64,000 nucleotides of DNA from NCBI RefSeq assembly GCF_036588685.1, contig NC_086382.1, positions 64,790,001 to 64,854,000 of the forward strand, in the 5' to 3' direction. The position numbers and the translations under genes were made by a program. Positions within the stretch are counted from its first letter, which is position 1, and each line of letters begins with the position of its first letter. This document shows positions 1 through 64,000 of the stretch, piece by piece. Below the pieces are notes generated by a model. The model ran no database searches. It saw only the letters and a program-made list of their open reading frames with translations, and had not been told where the DNA came from. The stretch is from Mytilus trossulus (taxonomy: Eukaryota).

Positions 1-886
1 TATTCCAATTTACAGTCAAATTAATCAGAAACTAGATCACAAGATGTAAGGTTATAGCCGGTCATGGTTTCTTATTTGAGGAAGGATGGATATAATATTA
101 AAAGTTGTTTATTATTATCAGGTTGTGTCAATAGCTACGATTACTTAAAGATTAACATGCTTAAGCGACATTTGTTTGTAATCGGAAGACAATTGTACAA
201 TTCATTTTCCATAACAATTAAAATAACCTAAACAAAGTGTAAGACATTGTTTAAATACCATGTTCGTGTAAGGGCTGCATGATTTTGTTCAGATATTTCA
301 AGAATTAATGACTTTTTGATAATGAAATAACTTCTTCCAAACATAACATATGCTGTTAATTGTATATAAAATTGAGAATGGAAATGGGGAATGTGTCAAA
401 GAGACAACAACCCGACCAAAATAAAAAAACACAACAGCAGAAGGTCACCAACAGGTCTTCAATGTAGCGAGAAATTCCCGCACCCGGAGGCGTCCTTCAG
501 CTGGCCCCTAAACAAATATATACTAGTTCAGTGATAATGAACGCCATACTAATTTCCAAATTGTACACAAGAAACTAAAATTTAAATAATACAAGACTAA
601 CAAAGGCCAGAGGCTCCTGACTTGGGACAGGCGCAAAAATGCGGCGGGGTTAAACATGTTTGTGAGATCTCAACCCTCCCCCTATACCTCTAACCAGTGT
701 AGAAAAGTTAAAGCATAACAATACGCACATTAAAATTCAGTTCAAGAGAAGTCCGAGTCTGATGTCAGAAGATGTAACCAAAGAAAATAAACAAAATGAC
801 AATAATACATAAATAACAACAGACTACTAGCAGTTAACTGACATGCCAGCTCCAGACTTCAATTAAACTGACTGAAAGATTATGAT

Positions 887-960
887 TTCATCATATGAAC
901 ATCAGGCACAATCCTTCCCGTAAGGGGTTTAGTATCATACCATCATAACATATATGAGAA
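887..960 (-). ncRNA. SECIS element (form 2) in PLE 3' UTR
   Basis: Minus strand reads UUCUCAUAUAUGUU-AUGAU-GGUAUGAUACU-AAA-CCCCUUACGGG-A-AGGAUUGUGCC-UGAU-GUUCAUAUGAUGAA. It has the AUGA/UGA core, an 11-bp helix II (10 of 11 pairs incl. G-U), unpaired AAA, an apical mini-stem CCC/GGG and helix I UCAUAU/AUAUGA. Confidence 0.8.
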
Positions 961-1007
961 GAACATAACCCGTGTCATGCCAACAACTGTTATTAGAATA
1001 AATGTGT

Positions 1008-1395
1008 TTAGTTCCGACGCAAAGACCTTATCAGTGACTCAATATTAACGCCAAAATATGCAATCTTTAATGACTTGACAACAGTATCGTAATTATATCC
1101 CTTCTTAATAAGTCTATTCAAAGGTTTTGTAAGTTTATGAGGTGAATACTGACACCTTTGTGCTTTATAAAGAATATTTCCATAAAAAATTGGATGTGAA
1201 ATACCTGAACGTATAAAAAGTCTGCATGTTGAGCTATATTTACGAATGATGTCTTTATACCGATGATAAAATTTAGTAAATGTTTTGACTAGTTTGTGAT
1301 ATCGAAAACCCTGGTGTAATAATTTTTCAGTAATACACAAATTTCTCTCGTTAAAATCTAAAACATTGTTACATACACGAGCGAATCGTACAAGT
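1008..1395 (-). pseudogene. C-terminal fragment of PLE reverse transcriptase ORF
   Basis: ORF track 1008..1340 matches the last 110 aa of ORF 57423..58238 apart from the start residue and one K/T change. Homology extends to 1395. Confidence 0.85.
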
Positions 1396-2110: not shown

Positions 2111-3709
2111 ATAGAGATAGTAACACAATATGTTTCTTTTAGAAGTTAAAGTAGAAAATCTGTCGATTAAATTTAAATTCTATTCTGTAATGAGTAATTG
2201 TATAGATTTGTAAAGAATGAGTTCAAACGCGGGTTTATGAAGATGATGATTAACCTAACCATATCTTTTATACTTTAGATTTTAAACAAGTGTTTGCTTT
2301 TTGCTTTTTAGGAGTGCGGTGATAGTCTCAAATAAACGTCTGAACACAACATACTTTTTTAATTGCATCTAATATAAGAGTATGTCAATAAGCAAACCCA
2401 TGTTATAATTCGAAATCTAATACCACTATTTGTTCGCCGTCATACAGAAAATAGCAGAACAACTAACGCAGCGTTTGATAAAATACACAAATGACAAAAA
2501 TCGTTTCCAGGAAGTGCGTAAAAAGTAAAAGATGAACGTTTATGAAAATACTGCAACAGAAATGATAAAACAATAACACCCCCCCTCCCCCCGGTACTGA
2601 TAAACTTTAAACCAAAGTTATAAAAATGAAGAAAATACACAAAATAAAGAGAGGATATCAACCTAGCAAAACCCGAAATTATATAATTATCTCATATAAA
2701 CTTATGTGATAACTGCTAAACAATCCGTAAAAAACAAAGAACCAAACACATTGGAAATTAAATTAATAAAATTGATCTTCATTAAGATTGGTTAATATCA
2801 TTTATAAAACTGCAGGAGTTTCTTCAAATCAGAACCGAACAATCAGAACAATTGCAAATTTAGTTATAAGTGACAATAAAAGTTTCAGATATAATTGCTG
2901 CACCACGGACCATCTTTAATGAGCAAGTTTCCGAGTACACAAAAAGGGAATGAAAAAAAAGTTGAATTTTTGTTAAACTGCGTGTGATAATTTAAATTGT
3001 TCGTTTGTTACTTTGAATATTTTTTTTGTAATATTTTATGCATGAATTGGAATTATAAAATATCTTATATTTGTCTATTTATTTTAATAAGTTATGAATT
3101 TTCTATCATTCAAGTTCTTTTGTTTGAAATAAATCAAGCAAAACATTGCCCTAATTGCATGTGTTTATTTTTTTGCGTTCCAAATAAGAATTACCATATG
3201 CTGATGTACGTTTTTGTTTATTTATTGTTATCAAAAACAATAATTGATACACCTAAGAACATAAAACCAAAATAGATTTCAAGAGGTTAACATATTAAGT
3301 ACAGAGTTCATGATTTTCCATAGTATTTCTACAAACAAGATAATAAATTATATGATATTACAATTAATCATGACAAACTGTGTATGGACTGTACGAGAAG
3401 TACTTCCCTTAATGTTCCTTTCAGACTGATGTAGGAGATAGTTAATTTAAATCACTTAAAAAAGTTAGTTGGAAAAGATGTTCAAAAAAATAATTTCTTG
3501 TTTACTTGCTTACTGCAATCAATGTATATCAAATAAATAAGTAAAGGACTACAATAACTTTGATCCTGAATATTGTATACTAAATTTGCACACAAAAAAA
3601 ACAACATGTAAGCATATTGTCGTGATAATTCGTTCGATATTTGTATCATCATTTCAGCCCTAATCTTATTGTTTTAATTTAACGGTTGGAATTTTCTTAG
3701 CTTCTGAAA

Positions 3710-3912
3710 TCGCATCCAGTGTTAAATTAAATGCGAAATAAACAGATAACACCATGCCTAAAAAAGAAACAGACAAACCAAAGTACAAATGAGACAACTT
3801 AGAAAACGCATGACTGAGCAATGCGAAACCCAATAAACACTTAAGGTGATCTCGGGTGCCCCGAAAGGGTAAACAGATCACACTCCATAAGTTGCACCTT
3901 TCGTGTTGCTAA
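3710..3912 (-). mobile_element. PLE family C 3' UTR remnant
   Basis: Reverse complement AACACGAAAGGTGC...TTACCCTTTCGGGGCACCCGAGATCACC aligns with 22155-22250 (+), which follows a PLE ORF end. Confidence 0.65.
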
Positions 3913-4664
3913 CTTTAAAACATATAAACATGCCTTAGGGAGTAAAAACTTTAGCATCTTATTAGTCTAACTACGAAGCTTGTCCATCTATTTCATTTGA
4001 AAAATGTCACGAAAAAAAAAGGTATATCGTTAAAACAACTTTAAAAGTATGTCGAAAACTTATTCCGATTGATCAGAGAACCCAATTTGCGGTTTACATG
4101 TCTGATGTAAAACTTTATATTTTGTATAAGTTCTGTAACATAAAGAAACTTCGACCACAAATCTGATAGAGTTGATTATATACAAAAAACTTACATAACA
4201 TATATTCATTGAAAGCTTGCCATCAGGAAAATAATTTGGTTTTACCGATACATTTTTATGTTATTTACATGATTATATCACTACATGATAGATATTACGT
4301 TTATCTTTTACACAGAGGGGCATCTTCTGACAGATAAAAACATGAAAGTTTCTAAAATGATAATCATTAGCGGCTCTACTTATTCAATGCAACATAGTGT
4401 ACCAAAGGGTGAAGGATCGTAGAGGGCGCAGTTGTTTAACCAATAACATAATAGAGTACATAACATATGTGTTACGTATAAGGAAGAGTATAGTCCTTGG
4501 AATACTGGTGATGTGGGTAAAACATATTGTCTATACATGCAGCAAACAAATACCACAAGGAAATACAAACTGTAATCTACAGCACAAATACAAATAATGT
4601 TACAAACCACATTCATATGACAGACACTACATTGGAATAATAAGATGAATGTTGTAATTGTACA

Positions 4665-33269: not shown

Positions 33270-34594
33270 TACAAGAGGTGATATGAGATGATTAAAGCTG
33301 TTAATTTTCTCCTTGATAATATATATGTACGTTTCGCCATCAAAGTTTATCGACATGTTGTAGGTATCCCCATGGGCACTAATTGTGCCCCTTTAATAGC
33401 AGACTTGTTTTTGTACTATTACTAATCACAGTTTATGACTAAATTCAGTAAAGACCCGTCGAATTTGAATTTTATTGATAAATTCAACAAAACGTACCGT
33501 TATCTTGATAATATGTTTTCGTTAAATAATCAAGAATGTTCTCAATATACTGCTGAAATTTACCCAAAGGAACTTTCTTTAAATAAATCAAATTTATTTG
33601 GTAATAACTGTCCTTTCCTGGATTTAGATATTTCTGTTTTAAAGGAGAATTTTTCTTTTTCAGATGGTGATGTTCCTTTGGCACATTTTTACGGTTTTTA
33701 TATTTCACAACTTGTTCATTATGACCGTGTCTGATGTGACGTTTTTGATTTTAACGAACGCAACCTATGTATTACTGGTAAATTATTAAACCAGGGATAT
33801 CGTTACCATAAATTACTTTTACTAAATTTGTCCATAGATATAAAGATTTGGTATTGAAGTTTGGTTATACCTGTAGAAAACTTATTTCAAAAGGGATAGC
33901 AAATCGTCATTTTTACGGGAATGTTGTTAACCTTGCCCGGAAATTTAGAAATGATCCATGTAAACTTGTCGCTTCTTGAAATAAACTTATTCTAAAAGGT
34001 TACCTATTCAACACTGTAATACGGATTGATAGTTTAGTCTTAGATGCATGATATTTTTATTGGTTGTTCGTGACTTTGAACTAGCTGTCAGATAACTGCA
34101 AGTACTCTCAGTTCTGTTCATTGTGTCTTTTTGTGTCGGGATGTATAAGTACCCGGCCACGTCCACTTATATTTTTGTCCATCTGATGAGTTAAGCCTTT
34201 TTCAACTGATTTTTATAGTTTGTTCTTATGTTGTACTGTTATACCACTGTCCCAGATTAGGGGAGGGTTTGGATCCCGCTTACATGTTTAACCCCGCCAC
34301 ATTATTTATGTATGTGCCTGTCCCCAGTCTGGAGCCTGTAAATTAGTGATTGTCGTTTGTTTATGTGTTACATATTTGTTTTTCGTAGATTTTTGTACAT
34401 AAATAAGGCTGTTAGTTTTCTCGTTTGAATTGTTTTACATTGTCTTATCGGGACCTCGTATAGCTGACTATGCGGTATGGGCTTTGCTTTGTTGAAGGCC
34501 GTACGGTGACCTATAGTTGTTAATGTCTGTGTCATTTTGGTCTTTTGTGGATAGTTGTCTCATTGGCAATCATACCACATCTTCTATTTTATAT
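33270..34594 (+). mobile_element. Older 5'-truncated Naiad-type PLE (related subfamily), nested in a family C remnant
   Basis: Translates EMIKAVNFLLDNIYVRFAIKVYRHVVGIPMGTNCAPLIADLFLYYY*SQFMTKFSKDP...TYRYLDN...CPFLDLDI...YISQLVHYDRV*CDVFDFNERNLCITGKLLNQGYRYHKL. The 3' UTR ends in TTGTCTCATTGGCAATCATACCACATCTTCTATTTTTAT. Confidence 0.9.
33285..34020 (+). pseudogene. Decayed PLE reverse transcriptase
   Basis: RT motifs GIPMGTNCAP, YRYLDN (YLDD decayed) and FLDLDI. Contains premature TAA, TGA, an internal deletion and a frameshift. Confidence 0.85.
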
Positions 34595-35440: not shown

Positions 35441-36290
35441 TAAAGCTGAGAAGGAAAAGAAGAATATGTCATAGTTACAACAATACAAAAACACACAGAA
35501 GAACATACTTGGGAATCAAATAGGTCTTTAACGCAGGGAGAAAATCCCGCAACCAAATGCTGGTTTCAGCTGACTCCAAATACATAAATATATACTATGG
35601 TCGGGTGGTTGTCACTTTGACATATTCACCGTTTCCTTTCTCAATTTTAGTTCAGATTATGTCTTCATCATGTGTAAATCAAGCACAAATCCTGCCGTTA
35701 GGGGATAAGTAACATGCCTTGATTTATTATTAACACTACCCATACCAAGATAACAACTGGTTTTAAAATAATTGTGTTTATATTTCAGCCAAGCACCCAT
35801 GAGGAAATAAATTATCATTTCAAAAATTCCATTTTTAGTGACTTGATATCAGTATCGTTACTTTATTTTCTCTGAAACAGTCGTTTGGTTAGCTATGGAG
35901 CCAAACTTTACAAACTTTTGTAGAATATTACCTAAAAAAATTGGACACGAAAATCCTGAACCTACAGTGTATGCACGTTAATATATATTTGCGAATGATG
36001 GCCTCGTACCAAAAACAAATAAAGAAGAAATTTTGCGATATTGAAAAAGCTGTTGTCCGAACTTTCAGTAAAACAGAGATTTCTTTCGTTCAATTCAAGT
36101 ACAATGTTACATACACAAGGAAACCGAAGAAGATGAGATATATGAATACCAATATATTGTTCCAGGAGAATACCACCATCTGGGAACGTAAAATTAACAA
36201 GAGCAAATAAAAAGTAATTTCTTTTATTGTAAGTTATAGTAGTAATCGTCCCTTTAAGATTAAAAAAAATGATGATACTCACATTTAGTT
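35441..36290 (-). mobile_element. Old, diverged copy of the young Naiad-type PLE family
   Basis: ORF 35962..36282 contains FALVNFTFPDGGILLEQYIGIHISHLLRFPCVCNIVLELNERNLCFTE. The 3' UTR (35441-35780) aligns with 370-530 and 885-1010 and includes a decayed SECIS at ~35664-35730. Confidence 0.8.
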
Positions 36291-38019: not shown

Positions 38020-38645
38020 CCCCATTTTGCTAATTGTCTATATGCCTTTTGTGGGTCCTTGTTAAATGCCGTGGTTCCGTACTTATACATCCCGTCATTG
38101 TGCTATTGTACTATGGTAATTTTTGTATAGTTTATTTCATTATTAATCAAGTGCTATATATATATGATTTATTGTGCATCTTTGAAACCTTTTTGTTTGT
38201 TTTTATAGTGACTATGATTACAATGTTGACCGCTGTACCTCAATTTTTACCTATTATAAAATTGAGAATGGAAATGGGGAATGTGTCAAAGAGACAACAA
38301 CCCGACCAAATAAAAAACAACAGCAGAAGGTCACCAACAGGTCTTCAATGTAGCGAGAAATTCCCGCACCCGGAGGCGTCCTTCAGCTGGCCCCTAAACA
38401 AATATATACTAGTTCAGTCTGTTTGTTTTATTCACACAGTGTTGAAACTATAAACTGGAATTCTATGCGACTTTCATACAAGTGAGATTTTTATAAAACA
38501 AGGTTTATTCTACAATTTTCTAATTAAGTAAATGCCGGTACCAAGTCAGGAATATGATAGTTTGTTTCCCGTCGTTTGATGTGTTTGAACTATTGTGTTA
38601 TGCCATTTGTTTATGGACTTTCCGTTTTGAAAATTGCTAGGAGTT
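38020..38645 (+). repeat. Family E repeat interrupted by a young PLE 3'-end insertion
   Basis: Flanks ...TTTTTACCTATT | CTGTTTGTTTTATTCACAC... are contiguous in the homologues at 23085-23130 and 53530-53580. Confidence 0.7.
38256..38418 (-). mobile_element. ~160-bp 3'-terminal copy of the young PLE
   Basis: Nearly identical to 366-533 (ATAAAATTGAGAATGG...TACTAGTTCAGT), differing in A-tract length. Confidence 0.9.
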
Positions 38646-39490: not shown

Positions 39491-42400
39491 TTATTATATC
39501 GTAGCTACTGGATGTCTATATTATTTGTTTTGTAACGATAACAAATCTGGGTATCAAACGTACCAATCGTGACAACAGTAATGCTTAACTTTTTGTCAAC
39601 TGTCGTCAAGTTAATTTGCAGTCACTAGTTGTGTTTCTTCTATATAAAAGTCAAATTTATTCCAGATAATTACTTTATCTAATATTGAATCCCACACATG
39701 TAAAAAAGTAAAGAAAATTTCTAAAAGCACTTAAAAAAACTATTTTGATAAAAACGTTCATCGAAAAATAATATCTGCAATTATATTATCTTTCATGGAA
39801 AAATTCTTTTTTGAAATTTTATAATGGGAAATCATCATTAAAGTAATACGGATTTGCCAAAAGCAAATTAGCTTATTGGAGTGACGTAGACATCATTTAC
39901 TGTAAAACTATGTCAGCCCAAATATCATTTTGCACTTAATTTATAGAATGACGGTTCATGAAAAAAAAAAAATTATTCATACGAAATTGGTTTTATAAAG
40001 CTTAAGTAGCATATTGATGACAAAATGTTTGAAATAACATAAAAGTGAATTGTATATATTTAAAATGTTTAAAGAAACAGTAAAGGGATAACATATTGAA
40101 CACATAAATGAGATTAAATGGTCTGCTTATTGTTCACGAATTATCACAGAACTGTATATTTCCTGCATTCATACTATTGATTCAACATTTTGAATAACAC
40201 TGAAAATGAAAGTAAAAAGTTATCCGTCAAAACTATAGTCAGGAATGTATTCAAAAAAACAAAACGGTTGTATGTTTTCCGGAATTTACGATAATTCTAA
40301 CTTTTTTCAAAATTTGCCACTTTTTATTATAAAAACCATGATATTCAATGTTATATGCAAAAACAGTGTGTATACGTTGATATTATGGAAGTAACTTTCT
40401 TTAAACTGTAAAGCGATACATAACAATTCGATCAGTGAACTGTTTTACTTTTTAGTTGCTTAATTGTGGAAATCTGATGATTACAAATGAACTAAATGAA
40501 CAGAGATGATGTGCACACAACGTTAATATGTTTTGAACGTTTATAGTTTCGAAAGAGCAAATAACAGGCGGAGATATCAACGGGACATAAAGACTGGTAA
40601 GACGAACGGAAACAGACATCGGTATTGCAAAAAAAAAACCGACAAAAACAATCAATTTTCCTGGTTTGTAGCCATCTTTTAGTTATCCATTTATTTTTCA
40701 CTTGTTTATACCATGTTCGATTACATTACAATATGATATCAAAAACTGTTTTCCCTACAAACATGAACTTTTAAATAATCTCTTCCAAAAGCAGCATAAA
40801 AGCCGACTTTTGAATCAGCTGTTACAACCATAGTCTGCAATAAGTTTCGAAATAAATGAGAAAAATATAATTAAAAGTACCTCTTCATCAACTATACCAG
40901 TAACGGATATGTTTTAAAATCGGTATGGAGTATACTAATTTAATTTAGAAAGCAATTAGTATCGAACATAAAATATAAATACTATTTTGGCATTTGGGCT
41001 GCAGACAAGCAGTTATTGAAATGAAAAGAAAGTATAAGCTTTTCATATCGCACTTATAAGTGGTAATTGGTGAATATATGCCAAATCAATGTTGTTAACA
41101 TTTCGTTGGGGATGTTATGAGACCTAAAAAAAAATACTTTCAAAATACTACATAAATCATCAAATGATTAAATCAGCCATTTGTCAATAAATGCATGAAG
41201 ACTTTAAAATTATTAATACATTTTTCGTGACATATGATTTGAGATATATAGGTTATATTATGGCATTTTTTCATATCAGACCCAATATCAGTCCTATGTC
41301 AAGATATCAGCCCTACCTTAAGGATTGGTTTGACCATAGGTTGTTAAGGGGTCTGATATGTGAAGTTCTTTTTATCATATTCTTCAGCAGAAAACACACA
41401 GTCTAAGGTCTGTGTTGAAGACCGTACTTTTACCTATCAGGATTTACTTTTATCAATTGTGAGTTGAATGGAAAGTTGTCTCATTGGCACTTATACCACA
41501 TTATTCGATATTTAAAACTTTTTTTTTTAAACGTTGAAATAAAATATATGTTGTTATATTTGTTTTGCATTTTCAATAATCACAAATTTTCTTGTTACTT
41601 AAATTTTTTTATTCAACTTTGTTATGTTTTACACAAATAAAACCGTACCGTTGAGGTGTATTTCGCGGAATTTGTCGAATGACGTCGAAATGTCATGCAA
41701 TAATGTTACAAAAAAGCATGTCATGATAACCGTAAACAGTTGATATTAACGGAAAGCAATTAATAACAAAAGACATATTACACGGCTAAGGAATTCTTCA
41801 AATTTAATGATGAATAAATATATGTACAAATTAGTTTTATCATGAGTATAAGATGATTTATTATCAAATGACATTATCAGCACAGATAACTTATTTTTTT
41901 CCAGTACTGCCTGACGTTACACGGCATTTGGTGTTCTGTGTATGTCTTATTCTGCTCGCCAAAGTTAAATTTGCCAGGTTGTTAAAACTTATGGTCATGT
42001 TTAGTTGTATATGTTTTTATAGAAACATGTCATATAAATATTGAAGGTCATGCTTTGAACGAAAATCATTTAACAACATGCTATCGTACGATTCCATTTT
42101 ACACTACAGGCTTTAAAACATATACGAGATGTTATTGACAACAAGGTGTTGCTGTTAGTACCATCTTTAATGCAGATGAAATTAGAATGACTGTGAGAAA
42201 ATCAAAGTAATCAATATGTGAAAATTTACAAATGTAAAACATATATTCTCAGTTTGAAATTGTTCAATTTCATTTTTGCAATATATAGTGTTTTGAAAAT
42301 CCCCCGAACTGAATGACACATCAATTGAATCAGTTGAACAGATGTTTTTCAAAGGTCAATGTTCTTTGATTTTTTAACTTTTGCTACACATATAGTATAG

Positions 42401-43146
42401 AAGATTTAATACAGCATTCAAGGTTTATGTTTTCTAAACTTCTATACTTGGAAAACATATTTCCGTTAACGGTTGATTTCTATTTAGATTGATGACAAAA
42501 TTGTCTCTCCCGCTACTTGCAGTAATTTACCCTTTCCCAACCTAATTGCTTTTAGTTCATGAATTCAAACGTAGCTTTAAGAATGTCGTGTAAATATAAG
42601 ACTTTGCACTCCTGAATAACACTGTGGGTGTGGGGTGATTGATCTATGTCCACACACAAAAATACAAAATAAATGAAAAATCTATACTTTGTTAAAATCA
42701 AAACACTACATCATCTAAAAATTGGAACCACAAGAGTGTAATTTACAAAGTTGCAAAATGAGTCATCAATCATAGTAGATTTTAATATAATGTTAAAGGA
42801 ACCGACGAATATATTATCATATTAACTTCAACCAATGAATTGTGCATACTGATCCTTATACATTTTTTTGGGTTTTTTTTGTTTGGTATTTTTGTCTATG
42901 TATTTTATCTTCATACGCTAGATAACGACTTTGGATCTTAAAAGCTCCAAAAAGACACATTGTTTTTCAATATTCAGACTAATCCATCGCGGTAAATTCA
43001 GCACCATCGTGATTTATTTACTAATATCAGTTGTATTTTGTGTTGAAAAGAACTAGCTTTCCATAACATTGAGTATTCTTATTTCGATACTTTCTGTCTA
43101 TTTTTTTTTAAAGTTGTGTTTGTTCCTAATACCGATATTTTAAGCT

Positions 43147-43395
43147 AATAGATATAGAAAGATGTGGTGTGAGTGCCAATGAGACAACTCTCCATCCAAG
43201 TAACAATTTAAAAAGTAAACCATTATAGGTTAAAGTACGGCCTTCAACACGAAGCCTTGGCTCACGCCGAACAACAAGCTGTAAAGGGTCCCAAAATTAC
43301 TAGTGTAAAACCATTCAAACGGGAAAACCAACGGTCTAATCTATATAAACAAAACGAGAAACACATATATATTACATAAACAAACGACAACAACT
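43147..43395 (-). mobile_element. Family B PLE 3'-end copy (duplicated at 47537-47785)
   Basis: GATATAGAAAGATGTGGTGTGAGTGCCAATGAGACAACTCTCCATCC. The reverse complement matches the 3' terminus of the 33270-34594 element. Confidence 0.75.
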
Positions 43396-43596
43396 ATTAC
43401 AACTGATTGTAGTTCAGTTGCTGTCGTTGTTTAATGACTGTCATATTGTTTCCGTAAATCGTTTGTTATGAATTTGGATGTCAATTGAGTCCATGTTTCT
43501 CATTTTTCATGGGCCGTTAATTGATTTATTTCTGAAAATTTACGTCGGGGCTTTTAATAGCCGAATATACGTACTTTATTAATTTATCTCAAAGCC

Positions 43597-43743
43597 AAGT
43601 GGCGGATCTGGGTATTGTTCCGGGGACCGGAACCCCCATTTTTTGGGGACGATCAATACATTTGAATGGAGACATTTAGTTGGAAACGTTTCTTCATTCT
43701 GGCTTTTATAGCCCCCTTTTAGAAATGAATGGATCTGCCCCTG
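43597..43743. mobile_element. Small MITE-like element with 6-bp target-site duplication
   Basis: Ends AAGTGGCGGATCT and GGATCTGCCCCTG are imperfect inverted repeats (9 of 13). Flanked by AAAGCC at 43591-96 and 43744-49. Only the left part survives in copy B (47987-48033). Confidence 0.65.
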
Positions 43744-44221
43744 AAAGCCTATATCCGCTTTATTTAAATTTTGGTGGATTATCGAGTCATAGACCATTTA
43801 CCATATCTTCTTATTTTCATAACCCTGCCCAATAAAATATAAAATTAAGTTACTATTTTGATGAACCCTCCTAGACAGATATGACTACCTTACGGACATA
43901 TTACACACCAACTTTTGCTTTCGTATTGAAAATAGTATGTAACAATAGAACCTTACCGCGAAACTTGACCAATGAATACTGAAACTTTTATTTGTTGTGG
44001 TATCTATTGGTGTTTAATTTATACTGAGTGCCAATGAAAACGCAACACTTGTTTTTTCCAAAATAAAATTTATATTAGAAATGATAATCTTTCAAAATAA
44101 ATTGTTCTTGAAAATTAACAATTCTAACAAAAGATCGATATCAAACAAAAAAATTTCATTGTCATCTTTCAGACGCTTTAGGTAAACGAAACATCCAATG
44201 TCGAATCATCAACTCACAGTC

Positions 44222-44917
44222 CTAACAAAACATGTTACAACCCCGTTGTGCAGCGCAATCTCGACAGCGCCGAGGAATTGATCATCCCGGACGTTTAATG
44301 TGATCTCGAGGAATGTTGTTCCACTTGTCCCGCATATCAAACTCAAGCTGACTTTATGATATTGGTGGTGGTTTTCATCGTCTAAACCATCTCCAATCTG
44401 ATGCAAAATTTGCTCGATCGGACCAAAATCGGGCGAAACACATGACTTTGGGCCAATATTGGTGCCAAATGTCTATGTAATCATTACTTACGGGTTTGGG
44501 TAACATTGAATGATTTTTGGTCTACAGAATTCAATATGTACGCCTTACGGCCATTTAGATGTCACTGAGGAAAGACTTTGGTGCTCTATAACAATTTCTG
44601 CGCAAATGGTGCTTTACTAAAATTGCTCCAAAGGATCTACCGTGACCACCATTGAACTCTCGTGACCTTTTTACACCCATCAGAGTCAATGTCGAATATG
44701 TTTAAGACCAAACGTATCGGTCTGGCTGAACGTTTCTTGCTTTTTGTACCCCGGGATGTCGCTTAACATTAAATGATTCATTTTTGGTTGAATTTGTGGA
44801 TGATTTGGGTTATTGTAGAGGCTACAACTTCAGTCTTCTCGTAATTGTATGCAGCGAAAGGCTTCATTGGATCATGCTCAAAACTGCATGTCGCTGGTTG
44901 TCAGAAAGTCCTGGCAT
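44222..44917 (-). pseudogene. Decayed, internally deleted Tc1-like transposase (copy A)
   Basis: Starts MPGLSDNQRHAVLSMIQ*. Has WP..SPDFGPIEQI (Tc1 WPxxSPDLNPIE motif) and C-terminal RDKWNNIPRDHIKR..SIPRRCRDCAAQRGCNMFC*. Multiple frameshifts and stops. Confidence 0.85.
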
Positions 44918-45074
44918 TTACTCAGATGTTTATTGCAGTTTCCTTACAATATTGGCGGGAAAATTAATGACATTAGCCAAGCTTTAAATGGCAAAATCGT
45001 AAAAATGGTGCGTATGTTGAAAAGCGGTGAACTCGGATTATGTCTGTTCAAAATAGCCCTTACTTCGCATTTGT

Positions 45075-48000
45075 TCCATTTATTTTTCACTTGTTTATAC
45101 CATGTTCGATTACATTACAATATGATATCAAAAACTGTTTTCCCTACAAACATGAACTTTTAAATAATCTCTTCCAAAAGCAGCATAAAAGCCGACTTTT
45201 GAATCAGCTGTTACAACCATAGTCTGCAATAAGTTTCGAAATAAATGAGAAAAATATAATTAAAAGTACCTCTTCATCAACTATACCAGTAACGGATATG
45301 TTTTAAAATCGGTATGGAGTATACTAATTTAATTTAGAAAGCAATTAGTATCGAACATAAAATATAAATACTATTTTGGCATTTGGGCTGCAGACAAGCA
45401 GTTATTGAAATGAAAAGAAAGTATAAGCTTTTCATATCGCACTTATAAGTGGTAATTGGTGAATATATGCCAAATCAATGTTGTTAACATTTCGTTGGGG
45501 ATGTTATGAGACCTAAAAAAAAATACTTTCAAAATACTACATAAATCATCAAATGATTAAATCAGCCATGTGTCAATAAATGCATGAAGACTTTAAAATT
45601 ATTAATACATTTTTCGTGACATATGATTTGAGATATATAGGTTATATTATGGCATTTTTTCATATCAGACCCAATATCAGTCCTATGTCAAGATATCAGC
45701 CCTACCTTAAGGATTGGTTTGACCATAGGTTGTTAAGGGGTCTGATATGTGAAGTTCTTTTTGTCATATTCTTCAGCAGAAAACACACAGTCTAAGGTCT
45801 GTGTTGAAGACCGTACTTTTACCTATCAGGATTTACTTTTATCAATTGTGAGTTGAATGGAAAGTTGTCTCATTGGCACTTATACCACATTATTCGATAT
45901 TTAAAACTTTTTTTTTTAAACGTTGAAATAAAATATATGTTGTTATATTTGTTTTGCATTTTCAATAATCACAAATTTTCTTGTTACTTAAAATTTTTTT
46001 ATTCAACTTTGTTATGTTTTACACAAATAAAACCGTACCGTTGAGGTGTATTTCGCGGAATTTGTCGAATGACGTCGAAATGTCATGCAATAATGTTACA
46101 AAAAAGCATGTCATGATAACCGTAAACAGTTGATATTAACGGAAAGCAATTAATAACAAAAGACATATTACACGGCTAAGGAATTCTTCAAATTTAATGA
46201 TGAATAAATATATGTACAAATTAGTTTTATCATGAGTATAAGATGATTTATTATCAAATGACATTATCAGCACAGATAATTTATTTTTTTCCAGTACTGC
46301 CTGACGTTACACGGCATTTGGTGTTCTGTGTATGTCTTATTCTGCTCGCCAAAGTTAAATTTGCCAGGTTGTTAAAACTTATGGTCATGTTTAGTTGTAT
46401 ATGTTTTTATAGAAACATGTCATATAAATATTGAAGGTCATGCTTTGAACGAAAATCATTTAACAACATGCTATCGTACGATTCCATTTTACACTACAGG
46501 CTTTAAAACATATACGAGATGTTATTGACAACAAGGTGTTGCTGTTAGTACCATCTTTAATGCAGATGAAATTAGAATGACTGTGAGAAAATCAAAGTAA
46601 TCAATATGTGAAAATTTACAAATGTAAAACATATATTCTCAGTTTGAAATTGTTCAATTTCATTTTTGCAATATATAGTGTTTTGAAAATCCCCCGAACT
46701 GACTGACACATCAATTGAATCAGTTGAACAGATGTTTTTCAAAGGTCAATGTTCTTGGATTTTTTAACTTTTGCTACACATATAGTATAGAAGATTTAAT
46801 ACAGCATTCAAGGTTTATGTTTTCTAAACTTCTATACTTGGAAAACATATTTCCGTTAACGGTTGATTTCTATTTAGATTGATGACAAAATTGTCTCTCC
46901 CGCTACTTGCAGTAATTTACCCTTTCCCAACCTAATTGCTTTTAGTTCATGAATTCAAACGTAGCTTTAAGAATGTCGTGTAAATATAAGACTTTGCACT
47001 CCTGAATAACACTGTGGGTGTGGGGTGATTGATCTATGTCCACACACAAAAATACAAAATAAATGAAAAATCTATATTTTGTTAAAATCAAAACACTACA
47101 TCATCTAAAAATTGGAACCACAAGAGTGTAATTTACAAAGTTGCAAAATGAGTCATCAATCATAGTAGATTTTAATATAATGTTAAAGGAACCGACGAAT
47201 ATATTATCATATTAACTTCAACCAATGAATTGTGCATACTGATCCTTATACATTTTTTTGGTTTTTTTTTGTTTGGTATTTTTGTCTATGTATTTTATCT
47301 TCATACGCTAGATAACGACTTTGGATCTTAAAAGCTCCAAAAAGACACATTGTTTTTCAATATTCAGACTAATCCATCGCGGTAAATTCAGCACCATCGT
47401 GATTTATTTACTAATATCAGTTGTATTTTGTGTTGAAAAGAACTAGCTTTCCATAACATTGAGTATTCTTATTTCGATACTTTCTGTCTATTTTTTTTTA
47501 AAGTTGTGTTTGTTCCTAATACCGATATTTTAAGCTAATAGATATAGAAAGATGTGGTGTGAGTGCCAATGAGACAACTCTCCATCCAAGTAACAATTTA
47601 AAAAGTAAACCATTATAGGTTAAAGTACGGCCTTCAACACGAAGCCTTGGCTCACGCCGAACAACAAGCTGTAAAGGGTCCCAAAATTACTAGTGTAAAA
47701 CCATTCAAACGGGAAAACCAACGGTCTAATCTATATAAACAAAACGAGAAACACATATATGTTACATAAACAAACGACAACAACTATTACAACTGATTGT
47801 TGTTCAGTTGCTGTCGTTGTTTAATGACTGTCATATTGTTTTCGTAAATCGTTTGTTATGAATTTGGATGTCAATTGAGTCCATGTTTCACATTTTTCAT
47901 GGGCCGTTAATTGATTTATTTCTGAAAATTTACGTCCGGGCTTTTAATAGCCGAATATACGTACTTTATTAATTTATCTCAAAGCCAAGTGGCGGATCTG

Positions 48001-48942
48001 GGTATTGTTCCGGGGACCGGAACCCCCATTTTTCAGACGCTTTAGGTAAACGAAACATCCAATGTCGAATCATCAACTCACAGTCCTAACAAAACATGTT
48101 ACAACCCCGTTGTGCAGCGCAATCTCGACAGCGCCGTGGAATTGATCATCCCGGACGTTTAATGTGATCTCGAGGAATGTTGTTCCACTTGTCCCGCATA
48201 TCAAACTCAAGCTGACTTTATGATATTGGTGGTGGTTTTCATCGTCTAAACCATCTCCAATCTGATGCAAAATTTGCTCGATCGGACCAAAATCGGGCGA
48301 AACACATGACTTTGGGCTGATATTGGTGCCAAATGTCTATGTAATCATTACTTACGGGTTTGGGTAACATTGAATGATTTTTGGTCTACATAATTCAATA
48401 TGTACGCCTTACGGCCATTTAGATGTCACTGAGGAAAGACTTTGGTGCTCTATAACAATTTCTGCGCAAATGGTGCTTTACTAAAATTGCTCCAAAGGAT
48501 CTACCGTGACCACCATTGAACTCTCGTGACCTTTGTACACCCATCAGAGTCAATATCGAATATGTTTAAGACCAAACGTATCGGTCTGGCTGAACGTTTC
48601 TTGCTTTTTGTACCCCGGGATGTCGCTTAACATTAAATGATCCATTTTTGGTTGAATTTGTGGATGATTTGGGTTATTGTAGAGGCTACAACTTCAGTCT
48701 TCTCGTAATTGTATGCAGCGAAAGGCTTCATTGGATCATGCTCAAAACTGCATGTCGCTGGTTGTCAGAAAGTCCTGGCATTTACTCGGATGTTTATTGC
48801 AGTTTCCTTACAATATTGGCGGGAAAATTAATGACATTAGCCAAGCTTTAAATGGCAAAATCGTAAAAATGGTGCGTATGTTGAAAAGCGGTGAACTCGG
48901 ATTATGTCCGTTCAAAATAGCCCTTACTTCGCATTTGTTCCA
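45075..48942 (+). repeat. Segmental tandem duplication, copy B (lacks 526 bp corresponding to ~43644-44169)
   Basis: Junctions show TCCA microhomology (40686-89, 45075-78, 48939-42) and TTT microhomology (48031-33). Confidence 0.95.
48086..48781 (-). pseudogene. Decayed Tc1-like transposase (copy B)
   Basis: Duplicate of 44222-44917 at offset 3864. Confidence 0.85.
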
Positions 48943-56750: not shown

Positions 56751-57301
56751 GTTTTGTATTAGCAATAACTATTCTTAAAAATAAAATTGAGAATGGAAAT
56801 GGGGAATGTGTCAAAGAGACAACAACCCGACCAAAATAAAAAAACACAACAGCAGAAGGTCACCAACAGGTCTTCAATGTAGCGAGAAATTCCCACACCC
56901 GGAGTCGTCCTTCAGCTGGCCCCTAAACAAATATATACTAGTTCAGTGATAATGAACGCCATACTAATTTCCAAATTGTACACAAGAAACTAAAATTTAA
57001 ATAATACAAGACTAACAAAGGCCAGAGGCTCCTGACTTGGGACAGGCGCAAAAATGCGGCGGGGTTAAACATGTTTGTGAGATCTCAACCCTCCCCCTAT
57101 ACCTCTAACCAGTGTAGAAAAGTAAAAGCATAACAATACGCACATTAAAATTCAGTTCAAGAGAAGTCCGAGTCTGATGTCAGAAGATGTAACCAAAGAA
57201 AATAAACAAAATGACAATAATACATAAATAACAACAGACTACTAGCAGTTAACTGACATGCCAGCTCCAGACTTCAATTAAACTGACTGAAAGATTATGA
57301 T

Positions 57302-57375
57302 TTCATCATATGAACATCAGGCACAATCCTTCCCGTAAGGGGTTTAGTATCATACCATCATAACATATATGAGAA
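57302..57375 (-). ncRNA. SECIS element (form 2) in PLE 3' UTR
   Basis: Identical to 887-960. Confidence 0.8.
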
Positions 57376-57422
57376 GAACATAACCCGTGTCATGCCAACA
57401 ACTGTTTTTAGAATAAATGTGT

Positions 57423-58208
57423 TTAGTTCCGACGCAAAGACCTTATCAGTGACTCAATATTAACGCCAAAATATGCAATCTTTAATGACTTGACAACAGT
57501 ATCGTAATTATATCCCTTCTTAATAAGTCTATTCAAAGGTTTTGTAAGTGTATGAGGTGAATACTGACACCTTTGTGCTTTATAAAGAATATTTCCATAA
57601 AAAATTGGATGTGAAATACCTGAACGTATAAAAAGTCTGCATGTTGAGCTATATTTACGAATGATGTCTTTATACCGATGATAAAATTTAGTAAATGTTT
57701 TGACTAGTTTGTGATATCGAAAACCCTGGTGTAATAATTTTTCAGTAATACATAAATTTCTCTCGTTAAAATCTAAAACATTGTTACATACACGAGCGAA
57801 TCGTACAAGTTGAGATATATAAACACCGTAAGATGGTGACAAGGGAACGTCACCATCTAAAAACGGATAATTAACGATAGGAAATGAAAAATCATCCCTT
57901 TTATCATAAATTTTAGTATTCAGCTTTCCGTTAGTGATATAGATATCAAGATCGAGGAAAGGGCAGTGGTCATTGTTAGTATTAGCTTTATTTAAAGTGA
58001 GTTCACCAGGATAAATTTCATTAATATACATACTGAAGTCGTCATTATTGAGAGCCAAAATATCATCCAAATATCTAAAAGTATTATTAAATTTGTTTAT
58101 CAGATGTTGTTTTGATGGGTCTTTGCTTATTTTTGTCATAAATTGTAACTCGTAACAATACAAAAAGAGGTCCGCAATAAGTGGTGCACAGTTAGTCCCC
58201 ATTGGAAT
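57423..58208 (-). CDS. PLE reverse transcriptase, 5'-truncated (RT motifs B-E, thumb and C-terminal extension; no GIY-YIG)
   Basis: IPMGTNCAPLIADLFL, FRYLDD, CPFLDLDI, IYDKRDDFSFPIVNYPFL, YGVYISQLVRFAR. The first ~10 aa of the ORF-track entry come from flanking DNA, so expression as listed is unlikely. Confidence 0.85.
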   Translation of the reverse strand: MPMGTNCAPLIADLFLYCYELQFMTKISKDPSKQHLINKFNNTFRYLDDILALNNDDFSMYINEIYPGELTLNKANTNNDHCPFLDLDIYITNGKLNTKIYDKRDDFSFPIVNYPFLDGDVPLSPSYGVYISQLVRFARVCNNVLDFNERNLCITEKLLHQGFRYHKLVKTFTKFYHRYKDIIRKYSSTCRLFIRSGISHPIFYGNILYKAQRCQYSPHTLTKPLNRLIKKGYNYDTVVKSLKIAYFGVNIESLIRSLRRN

Positions 58209-58619
58209 TCTGTCTGAATGAAATTTAATACGCACCAAATGTACAAGATTCTAAGAATACACAGCGGATGAATTCTGCTAGCTTTCACCAATGAGCAAAC
58301 ATTAATTGTACCATATGATAGGGGACGTTCAATTTTAATTTACCTCGGAATTCCTATAACAGAGGAGTCATTTTGTCGATACCTTGTGATTGTTAACTAA
58401 TGGATCTACAGGACTTGTTTTTCATCATGCCTAAAGTTTGGTTTTGATTGTATAAAACAGTCTGGACTGTTAACATAATGTACGACAGTTTTGTAATCAC
58501 ATCCATATCGTTGTTTTGAAAAATATGTATATTCGTACGGTTCAGTGTCAATGCCGGGCAGCAGAAAAAAAGGTGGCATGTAAGATATTTATTTATCTTA
58601 TTTTCACGTAATATATCAT

Positions 58620-58682
58620 GTCAGCTGTTTGGTCGGGTTGTTGTCTTTTTGGTCCATTCTCCATTTCCATTTTCAATTTATT
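58620..58682 (+). repeat. Short 3'-terminal remnant of the young PLE family
   Basis: GGTCGGGTTGTTGTCTTTTTGGTCCATTCTCCATTTCCATTTTCAATTTAT aligns with the reverse complement of 366-418. Confidence 0.7.
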
Positions 58683-63847: not shown

Positions 63848-64000
63848 ACTAGTACATATTTGTTTAGGGGTCAGCTGAAGGACGCCTCCGGGTGCGGGAA
63901 TTTCTCGCTACATTGAAGACCTGTTGGTGACCTTCTGCTGTTGTTTTTATTTGGTCGGGTTGTTGTCTCTTTGACACATTCCCCATTTCCATTCTCAATT
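63848..64000 (+). mobile_element. ~155-bp 3'-terminal copy of the young PLE, opposite orientation, runs to window edge
   Basis: Reverse complement of 370-527, beginning at ACTAGT. Confidence 0.9.

What the first reader, a model, noticed from the sequence alone, without database searches (positions are those of the whole stretch)
887..960. SECIS element in the 3' UTR of a recently active Penelope-like retroelement: a probable selenoprotein-encoding transposon
Seen in sequence: about 60 nt after the TAA stop of the RT ORF, the sense (minus) strand folds as a form-2 eukaryotic SECIS. It has helix I (UCAUAU/AUAUGA), the AUGAU/UGAU non-Watson-Crick core, an 11-bp helix II (GGUAUGAUACU/AGGAUUGUGCC), unpaired AAA and an apical CCC/GGG mini-stem. 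The same sequence is at 57302-57375. Established: SECIS directs UGA recoding to selenocysteine, and to my recollection SECIS-bearing Naiad PLEs have been reported in spiders and clams. Inference: the full-length element encodes a Sec-containing endonuclease/RT, so retrotransposition would depend on selenium supply and host SBP2/eEFSec. The ORF stops at TAA rather than TGA, which fits. No TGA lies in the ~261 codons retained here, so any Sec codon must be in the missing 5' part. I cannot tell whether this family has already been described.
Basis: partly seen in the sequence, partly recalled or inferred. Interest (0 to 1): 0.9.

Follow-up and report, generated by a model that had tools for sequence, protein, structure and literature searches.

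The report
Selenocysteine signal in a retrotransposon tail
The hairpin is a genuine selenocysteine-insertion signal (SECIS) carried by two dead, truncated copies of a very young Naiad-type Penelope-like retrotransposon. Complete copies of it elsewhere in the genome spell four conserved cysteines as UGA, so this is a new family of a rare kind of element first described in 2021.

Summary
Observation confirmed. Window 889-959(-) and 57304-57374(-) hold identical form-2 SECIS hairpins with the AUGA/UGAU core, an 11-position helix II, unpaired AAA and a CCC/GGG mini-stem. Rfam SECIS_1 scores them 32.8 bits, just under the cut-off of 35; sibling copies score 37-42.9.

Interpretation supported. Both window copies are 5'-truncated insertions (128 and 261 codons kept) of a 4,016-bp element. 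An uninterrupted genomic copy has a 1,002-codon GIY-YIG endonuclease plus RT ORF. It has no TAA or TAG and four in-frame TGA, at codons 55, 86, 97 and 522. Each aligns to a cysteine that never varies in 36-49 Cys-type relatives.

Seventeen relatives from marine metagenome contigs, about 40% identical in protein, carry 1-5 TGA at the same cysteine sites. Most that reach the 3' UTR also have a SECIS there. Across eight of these SECIS, 11 of 17 pairs show compensatory changes. The TGA-bearing elements form one clade (SH-aLRT 99).

The host has tRNA-Sec, and 694 perfect copies of the SECIS core lie in the genome. Sec insertion itself is inferred, not shown.

The kind is published (Craig et al. 2021, clams and spiders). 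This scan had already found the same family on other DNA of this genome. Verdict: new member of a known kind. The window copies themselves are inert relics.

The parts
889..959 (-). SECIS copy A, form 2. AUGA 946-943, AAA 930-928, mini-stem 927-925 with 919-917, UGAU 904-901, helix I 957-952 with 896-891.
   Evidence: Rfam SECIS_1 32.8 bits at 892-956. Clade-specific model R1 73.8 bits. Minimum-energy fold reproduces the structure.
367..1395 (-). Element copy A: a 5'-truncated insertion covering unit nt 2988-4016, made of the RT C-terminal remnant plus the 644-nt 3' UTR.
   Evidence: blastn against a full-length genomic unit, 99.5% identity. 99.4% identical to copy B.
1008..1394 (-). ORF remnant of copy A: codons 875-1002 of the 1,002-codon ORF plus TAA at 1010-1008. 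It has no in-frame TGA.
   Evidence: tblastn 100% over 128 aa. Translation.
57304..57374 (-). SECIS copy B, identical in sequence to copy A.
   Evidence: Exact match of the 46-nt core. R1 73.8 bits.
56782..58210 (-). Element copy B: a 5'-truncated insertion covering unit nt 2588-4016.
   Evidence: blastn 99.65% over 1,429 bp.
57423..58208 (-). ORF remnant of copy B: codons 742-1002, including the RT motif YLDD, plus TAA. It has no in-frame TGA.
   Evidence: tblastn 99.6% over 261 aa. Translation.
35666..35734 (-). Decayed SECIS relic of an older related Naiad. The sequence is recognisably homologous, but the core AUGA reads AUCA and the AAA reads UAU.
   Evidence: R1 16.1 bits, E 0.02 in a 3.6-kb search, alignment shown. 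It lies downstream of the old RT fragment at 35915-36252(-).
35915..36252 (-). Old, degenerate RT fragment of a related Naiad family, 39-50% aa identity.
   Evidence: tblastn.
33282..34024 (+). Old RT fragment of a sister Naiad family, 47-58% aa identity. It carries a TAA, a frameshift and a TGA at 33732-33734. No SECIS was detected downstream.
   Evidence: tblastn. Translation. No SECIS hit.
38257..38418 (-). Extreme 5'-truncated 3' end of the same family (unit nt 3851-4016), without SECIS.
   Evidence: blastn 96.4%.
63848..64000 (+). Another short 3'-end fragment (unit nt 3856-4013), cut by the window end, without SECIS.
   Evidence: blastn 94.3%.

Best explanation
The hairpin is a functional-type eukaryotic SECIS that belongs to the 3' UTR of a young, abundant Naiad-type Penelope-like retrotransposon.

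In complete copies the single 1,002-codon ORF (GIY-YIG endonuclease, CxC linker, RT) contains four UGA codons. They sit at the second Cys of the CX4CxxC finger, the Cys before GIY, the first Cys of the CCHH finger, and the Cys 8 residues after DKA. The SECIS begins 54-64 nt after the TAA stop, and 1.5-2.9 kb downstream of those UGAs.

The proposed mechanism is that the SECIS recruits the host SBP2, eEFSec and Sec-tRNA machinery, so that the UGAs are read as selenocysteine and the full endonuclease-RT protein is made. This step is inferred from sequence, not shown.

The two copies in this window are 5'-truncated dead-on-arrival insertions. They keep the SECIS but none of the UGA codons, so locally the SECIS is an inert passenger.
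For: SHOWN
1. SECIS signature. The invariant AUGA...AAA...GA core is present. SECIS_1 scores the window copy 32.8 bits over all 64 model positions. Sibling copies that differ by 1-6 nt score 37-42.9, above the cut-off of 35, and the top 30 SECIS_1 hits of the genome all lie in this element family.
2. ORF. An uninterrupted genomic copy has 1,002 codons with no TAA or TAG, against about 59 expected from composition. It has four TGA, at codons 55, 86, 97 and 522.
3. Cys alignment. In an alignment with 49 full-length Cys-type relatives (25-37% identity) the four TGA fall on Cys in 36/36, 42/42, 43/43 and 49/49 aligned sequences. Only 8 columns of the protein are at least 90% Cys. The chance that four random nonsense hits all land on such columns is about 9e-8.
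4. Relatives. In 17 metagenome contigs whose proteins are about 40% identical to this element's, the DKA+8 codon is TGA in 17/17. The other Cys sites switch between TGA and TGT/TGC, giving 1-5 TGA per element. Relatives whose contigs reach the 3' UTR show a SECIS-like match after the stop in all but a few cases; L070 and L067 match only weakly.
5. Covariation. Across 8 SECIS, 89% of cells pair, against 32-55% when the partners are slid. Eleven of 17 pairs change on both sides, against 1-3 when slid. None of 500 shuffles reaches the observed covariation score. All 8 fold as form 2.
6. Phylogeny. The TGA-bearing elements form one clade among 48 Cys-type proteins, SH-aLRT 99.
7. Host. The genome has two strong tRNA-Sec genes, 79.6 and 77 bits against a cut-off of 47.
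8. Recent activity. The top 40 matches are 100% identical, the SECIS core has 694 perfect copies, and truncated-plus-full tandem arrangements are present.
9. Precedent. Naiad selenoproteins with 3-4 UGA and a 3' SECIS were reported in PMC8557442.
Against: - No expression, ribosome or protein data could be obtained.
- The window copy's SECIS_1 score is below Rfam's gathering cut-off. Its helix II has one A.G mismatch and three G.U pairs.
- Folding energy is not better than shuffles (z -0.85).
- Conservation of the TGA codons within this family says little, because the copies are nearly identical by recency.
- I could not obtain DNA of Cys-type Naiads, so I could not show that they lack a SECIS.
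- The covariation set holds only 8 sequences from about 3 lineages.
Confidence: 0.88

Rival explanations
1. The hairpin is a kink-turn or 3'-UTR recognition structure that the element uses for something other than recoding, for example RT template recognition or binding an L7Ae-type protein. On this reading its match to the SECIS model is convergent.
For: LINE and PLE reverse transcriptases often recognise 3' stem-loops (general knowledge). The same stretch gives weak C/D-box snoRNA hits, which also reflect a kink-turn-like UGAUGA. The SECIS_1 score is under the cut-off.
Against: The full SECIS grammar is kept: AUGA, an 11-bp helix II, unpaired AAA, a mini-stem and GA. It stays invariant in relatives whose helices have changed sequence. 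It co-occurs with in-frame TGA at Cys sites in every lineage examined. This reading leaves unexplained how a 1,002-codon ORF with four UGAs would be translated.
Confidence: 0.05
2. The TGA codons are inactivating nonsense mutations in a non-autonomous family that is copied in trans by a Cys-encoding relative, and the SECIS-like hairpin is irrelevant.
For: Non-autonomous amplification is common among retroelements. Within-family identity cannot distinguish selection from recency.
Against: All four TGA sit on invariant Cys columns (P about 9e-8). There is no TAA or TAG in 1,002 codons of an A+T-rich ORF. The same sites are TGA in relatives about 40% identical in protein, which have otherwise open frames. 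The TGA-bearing clade is old and diversified.
Confidence: 0.03
3. One or both SECIS copies in this window have been co-opted by a host gene and direct Sec insertion in a host mRNA.
For: Craig et al. proposed that 5'-truncated SECIS-bearing Naiads could donate a SECIS to host 3' UTRs. The genome holds at least 694 perfect copies.
Against: No host coding sequence was recognisable near either copy. The only ORFs of 110 aa or more in the window are element remnants or low-complexity. The copies are 99.4-100% identical to the family, which means very recent, unselected insertions.
Confidence: 0.02

Closest known systems
Naiad selenoprotein families of clams, Naiad_Scon (Sinonovacula constricta) and Naiad_Mmer (Mercenaria mercenaria); Craig et al. 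2021, PMC8557442
   Same: Both are Penelope-like elements with an N-terminal GIY-YIG. Both have in-frame UGA at the Cys before GIY, the first Cys of CCHH and the Cys 8 aa after DKA. Both have a SECIS in the 3' UTR after a UAA/UAG stop, a bivalve-type host setting, high copy number, 5' truncation and tandem pLTR-like arrangements.
   Different: This family has a fourth UGA at the second Cys of the CX4CxxC finger. The paper reports that site only for a spider family; Naiad_Scon's fourth UGA is in RT6(D). The SECIS here is form 2 and starts 54-64 nt after the stop, whereas the paper reports type I at 1-21 bp. The sister lineage found here in metagenome contigs does start 1 nt after TAG. The assembly's hits fall mainly on contigs C1-C14. 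I read that loosely as about 14 chromosome-scale pieces, which would not fit the clams' 19-chromosome karyotype as I recall it; contig lengths were not tabulated, so this is a hint only. Earlier scan notes call the host a mussel.
Naiad selenoprotein families of spiders, Naiad_Sdum and Naiad_Smim (Stegodyphus); same paper
   Same: They have multiple UGA at conserved Cys, including the CX2-5CxxC finger, plus a 3' SECIS.
   Different: The paper infers an independent origin for them. They have no UGA at the CCHH finger, and the host phylum differs.
Cys-type Naiad elements, e.g. Penelope-2_CGi of oysters
   Same: Same domain order and motifs: CX2-5CxxC, GIY-YIG/CCHH, CxC, DKA, RT. Protein identity is 25-37%.
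   Different: Cys codons stand where this family has TGA. Whether they lack a SECIS could not be tested here.
Selenoprotein P
   Same: One mRNA has several UGA codons decoded processively through a 3'-UTR SECIS. It is especially Sec-rich in bivalves (cited in PMC8557442).
   Different: It is a host gene with two SECIS elements and a transport function. There is no homology.

Membership tests
Eukaryotic SECIS (Rfam RF00031 SECIS_1) | AUGA on the 5' strand and GA on the 3' strand forming the non-Watson-Crick quartet | tested here: met
   AUGA at 946-943 and UGAU at 904-901. Both are invariant in all 8 aligned SECIS.
Eukaryotic SECIS (Rfam RF00031 SECIS_1) | Helix II of about 9-12 bp between the core and unpaired A residues (AAA/AA) | tested here: met
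   Helix II has 11 positions (10 paired, 1 A.G), followed by AAA at 930-928. Seven of its 11 pairs show compensatory change across families.
Eukaryotic SECIS (Rfam RF00031 SECIS_1) | Covariance-model score at or above the curated gathering cut-off (35 bits) | tested here: not met
   The window copies score 32.8 bits and give no hit at the gathering threshold. Nine sibling copies in the genome reach 35.4-42.9 bits.
Eukaryotic SECIS (Rfam RF00031 SECIS_1) | Location in the 3' UTR of an mRNA with an in-frame UGA | tested here: met
   Met for the family: the SECIS follows the TAA of an ORF with four TGA. The two window copies have lost the UGA-bearing part.
Eukaryotic SECIS (Rfam RF00031 SECIS_1) | Directs Sec insertion and binds SBP2 | not testable with these tools
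   This needs a reporter assay, 75Se labelling or a binding assay.
Naiad clade of Penelope-like elements | N-terminal GIY-YIG endonuclease with an upstream CX2-5CxxC and an interleaved CCHH finger | tested here: met
   C50-x4-U55-xx-C58, then U86 before IIY, then U97-x4-C102 followed by QYVGET and the His residues. All align with 49 relatives.
Naiad clade of Penelope-like elements | CxC linker motif and DKA motif upstream of a C-terminal RT | tested here: met
   C385-N-C387 and PADKAANN at 510-517. RT motifs include YLDD.
Naiad clade of Penelope-like elements | [quoted passage not shown] | tested here: met
   A truncated copy directly abuts a full copy in L031, L032, L033 and L035. The window copies are truncated at unit nt 2988 and 2588.
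Naiad clade of Penelope-like elements | Phylogenetic placement with named Naiad reference sequences; IFD in the RT | not tested
   The database relatives are unnamed. The paper's supplement is not held. The IFD was not examined.
Selenoprotein-encoding Naiads (Craig et al. 2021) | In-frame UGA codons that correspond to conserved Cys of other Naiads | tested here: met
   4 of 4 TGA fall on invariant Cys columns. Three are the same sites as in the clam families.
Selenoprotein-encoding Naiads (Craig et al. 2021) | SECIS downstream of the non-UGA stop codon | tested here: met
   TAA is at unit nt 3373 and the SECIS AUGA at nt 3437.

The most novel reading that the evidence does not exclude
Bivalve genomes may harbour one old, diversified, selenium-dependent Naiad clade in which individual catalytic or zinc-finger cysteines switch between Cys and Sec over short evolutionary distances. 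I saw 1 to 5 Sec codons per family, including a site not reported before, the first Cys of the CxC motif. The bursts of this clade would scatter hundreds to thousands of ready-made SECIS elements through the genome. Those copies could seed new host selenoprotein genes, or compete with host selenoprotein mRNAs for SBP2.
Probability: 0.15. Interest if true: 0.7.

Novelty: new member of a known kind. Interest (0 to 1): 0.4.

Why it matters
Transposons that need selenocysteine are known from a single 2021 paper with four families. This family adds several things:
- It is very recently active, with 694 perfect SECIS cores in one genome.
- It combines four Sec sites not reported together before.
- It has a form-2 SECIS.
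- Its metagenome relatives show that the Sec-using Naiads sampled here form a single clade, in which the number of Sec codons ranges from 1 to 5.

That gives a natural series for asking why Cys to Sec replacement is favoured at zinc-finger and active-site cysteines. It also gives a concrete reservoir for testing whether transposons donate SECIS elements to host genes.

A practical point for annotation: gene callers cut these ORFs at the UGAs. The closest database proteins end exactly at the Sec positions.

Tried and rejected
- Pfam recognises neither half of the protein: RVT_1 reaches only 14 bits, and the rest is nothing or noise.
- The first full-length unit I read (L031) seemed to need a +1 frameshift near nt 2016. 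Comparison with about 33 copies showed a 2-bp deletion that only 2 matches carry (the unit itself and one other), so programmed frameshifting was rejected.
- Variation among the top-scoring genomic SECIS copies was not used as covariation evidence. Those loci were picked by model score, which enriches for chance mutations that improve pairing.
Older subfamilies and the sister family of 33282-34024 could therefore not be fetched.
- The listing of cluster members gave no names or organisms.
- The paper's supplementary consensus sequences are not held.
- A scan of viral contigs for Cys-type Naiad DNA, meant as a negative control for the SECIS, found only unrelated GIY-YIG domains.
- A search of earlier scan notes for host species identity gave nothing.
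- No structure or complex prediction was run, because none would bear on the question.

Full report
**1. What is in the window**

The feature is on the minus strand. An ORF ends with TAA at 1010-1008, and 61 nt later comes AUGA (946-943).

- Helix I is UCAUAU (957-952) with AUAUGA (896-891).
- The core is AUGA with UGAU (904-901).
- Helix II is 941-931 with 915-905. It has 11 positions: 7 Watson-Crick pairs, 3 G.U pairs and one A.G mismatch.
- The unpaired AAA is at 930-928.
- A CCC/GGG mini-stem closes the top.

The 46-nt core occurs twice in the window, at 901-946 and 57316-57361, with none expected by chance.

Rfam's SECIS_1 model aligns over all 64 of its positions with 32.8 bits. That is E 9e-5 in a 451-bp search and about 0.06 at the scale of the whole genome. 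The curated cut-off is 35 bits, so the whole-window scan at gathering threshold reported nothing. RNAfold gives the same structure as its minimum-energy fold, with an unremarkable z-score of -0.85.

**2. What carries it**

The two hairpins lie in two copies of one repeat, 366-1395 and 56781-57810, which are 99.4% identical and have unrelated flanks.

Against a full-length genomic unit of 4,016 bp:
- Copy A covers unit nt 2988-4016.
- Copy B covers unit nt 2588-4016.

Both are therefore independent 5'-truncated insertions. They keep 128 and 261 C-terminal codons of an RT-like ORF (motif YLDD) and a 644-nt 3' UTR. Neither contains an in-frame TGA.

**3. The complete element**

The window is G000:C10:64790001-64854000 in a 1.30-Gb assembly. 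An 818-bp RT probe found at least 1,502 candidate places. All 40 that were scored are 100% identical over 788 bp or more.

Several loci show a truncated copy directly abutting a full copy at a 4.0-kb period. This is the pseudo-LTR arrangement typical of Penelope-like elements.

One uninterrupted copy was read only to number the codons (L033:3728-7743, minus). It has:
- ATG at unit nt 367.
- 1,002 codons.
- TAA at nt 3373.
- No TAA or TAG inside.
- Four in-frame TGA, at codons 55, 86, 97 and 522.
- The SECIS AUGA at nt 3437.

From the ORF's base composition, about 42 TAA and 17 TAG would be expected in 1,002 random codons.

A 2-bp deletion that breaks the frame in the first unit I read is carried by only 2 of the roughly 33 matches.

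**4. The TGA codons are cysteine positions**

A full HMMER search with residues 98-521 found 2,591 relatives. I aligned 49 full-length ones, 25-37% identical. They have Cys opposite:
- codon 55 in 36 of 36 aligned sequences,
- codon 86 in 42 of 42,
- codon 97 in 43 of 43,
- codon 522 in 49 of 49.

Only eight columns of the whole protein are at least 90% Cys, and four of them are the TGA codons. Four random nonsense hits would all land on such columns with a probability of about 9e-8.

The sites are:
- the second Cys of CX4CxxC,
- the Cys before GIY,
- the first Cys of the CCHH finger,
- the Cys 8 residues after DKA.

The last three are the sites reported for the clam Naiad selenoproteins (PMC8557442).

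**5. Independent lineages**

The closest database proteins, 40-69% identical, are short ORF pieces. They stop exactly before the DKA+8 position and start just after the CCHH position. Their genes are evidently cut by stops at the same places.

A scan of metagenome contigs returned 29 loci. In the 17 that include the N-terminal part:
- The DKA+8 codon is TGA in all 17.
- The CCHH codon is TGA in 16.
- The pre-GIY codon, the CX4CxxC codon and a fifth site, the first Cys of the CxC motif (Cys385 in this family), are TGA in some and TGT/TGC in others.

This gives 1 to 5 TGA per element. Two further TGA, one each in L076 and L069, fall at unconserved positions and look like private damage.

In relatives whose contigs reach the 3' UTR, a SECIS or SECIS-like match generally follows the stop:
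- It starts 1 nt after TAG in L069 and L071-L074 and L076.
- It starts 54-58 nt after TAA in L077-L079, which are this same family at 99% protein identity.
- It starts 138 nt after TAA in L081.
- L070 has only a weak match, 15.5 bits with the clade model, and SECIS_1 does not detect it.
- L067's copy is interrupted by an insertion and scores 30.9 bits.

**6. Covariation**

I aligned eight SECIS from these lineages. They keep AUGA, AAA and GA invariant while the helices change sequence.
- 89% of cells form standard pairs, against 32-55% when the partners are slid by 1-3 columns.
- 11 of 17 pairs show changes on both sides, against 1-3 when slid.
- None of 500 shuffles reaches the observed covariation score.

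Each sequence folds on its own into helix I, internal loop, helix II, AAA and a mini-stem of differing sequence. That is form 2.

A covariance model built from them (R1) finds further copies in L083 and L086-L091. It scores the two window copies at 73.8 bits.

**7. One clade**

A maximum-likelihood tree of the 418-residue region used 15 TGA-bearing rows and 48 Cys-type rows. It puts all TGA-bearing elements on one side of a branch with SH-aLRT 99. This family groups with L081.

The tree is midpoint-rooted and was built with the quick search. Within this sample, a single origin is therefore compatible with the data rather than proven.

**8. Host capacity and abundance**

The genome has two strong tRNA-Sec genes, at 79.6 and 77 bits against a cut-off of 47.

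The exact 46-nt SECIS core occurs 694 times, and its reversed control 0 times. The 30 best SECIS_1 hits of the genome all lie in this element family or its older subfamilies, at 85-99% identity.

**9. Mechanism**

Shown:
- the SECIS grammar and its conservation,
- the Cys-position TGA codons,
- the otherwise open frame,
- the recency of amplification,
- tRNA-Sec in the host.

Inferred:
- The element's mRNA is translated with Sec at the four UGAs through the 3' SECIS and the host SBP2/eEFSec machinery.
- Production of endonuclease-RT therefore depends on selenium status.

The window copies lack every UGA. Their SECIS has no element-encoded job here, and I found no host gene nearby.

**10. Comparison with what is known**

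Craig et al. 2021 (PMC8557442) described Naiads and reported four selenoprotein-encoding families. Two were from clams and two from spiders, with 3-4 UGA and type I SECIS 1-21 bp after the stop.

The present family is of that kind. It differs in three ways:
- its combination of Sec sites, adding the CX4CxxC site,
- its SECIS form,
- the spacing between stop and SECIS.

Full-text searches found no later paper on such elements.

Earlier notes of this scan record the same family on other pieces of this genome with the same reading. I reached it independently from the sequence. I add the metagenome series, the covariation test and the tree.

I could not name the host. Earlier notes call it a mussel. 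The genomic hits fall mainly on contigs C1-C14, which I read loosely as about 14 chromosome-scale pieces. Contig lengths were not tabulated, so this is a hint only.

**11. Limits**

- No expression or protein evidence was obtained.
- There is no negative control on Cys-type Naiad DNA.
- There is no direct comparison with the published consensus sequences.
Copies were only compared and described.

**Verdict**

This is a new member of a known kind. The copies in this window are inert relics.

Noticed in passing
window 33732-33734 (+), within the old Naiad RT fragment 33282-34024: There is an in-frame TGA opposite Cys882 of the young family (RVC versus RV-TGA-C). That column is Cys in 28 of 48 relatives. 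The copy also has a TAA and a frameshift, so the TGA could be a Sec codon of a sister family or mere decay. No SECIS was detected downstream.
   Followed up: partly
window 35666-35734 (-): This is a recognisable but dead SECIS of an older related element. AUGA reads AUCA and AAA reads UAU. It lies about 180 nt downstream of the RT fragment at 35915-36252(-).
   Followed up: yes
window 40686-48942: There is a tandem duplication of a unit of about 4.39 kb. 40686-43643 matches 45075-48033 at 99.6%, and 44163-45078 matches 48027-48942 at 98.9%. I saw no convincing coding capacity.
   Followed up: no
G000:C10:63843916-63855579 and 64461689-64492367 (about 0.3-0.9 Mb before the window): There are long tandem arrays of an 81-nt tRNA-like gene at a period of about 891-900 bp. 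They score 45.9 bits on the tRNA-Sec model, just under its cut-off of 47. They are probably a long-variable-arm tRNA (Ser/Leu type) array rather than tRNA-Sec.
   Followed up: no
L067-L095 (marine metagenome contigs): Contigs of about 4 kb from many marine metagenomes are complete or near-complete Sec-type Naiad elements, presumably from bivalve DNA in the samples. Gene callers split their ORFs at the UGA codons.
   Followed up: partly
L070:4555-4618 (+): There is a weak twister-P1 ribozyme match (24.1 bits against a cut-off of 67) in the 3' region of a Sec-type Naiad relative. It is probably chance.
   Followed up: no
window 38257-38418 (-), 63848-64000 (+), 58628-58679: Very short 3'-terminal fragments of the element (the last 50-165 nt) recur in the window. 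They are either extreme 5' truncations or a short non-autonomous element sharing the tail.
   Followed up: no
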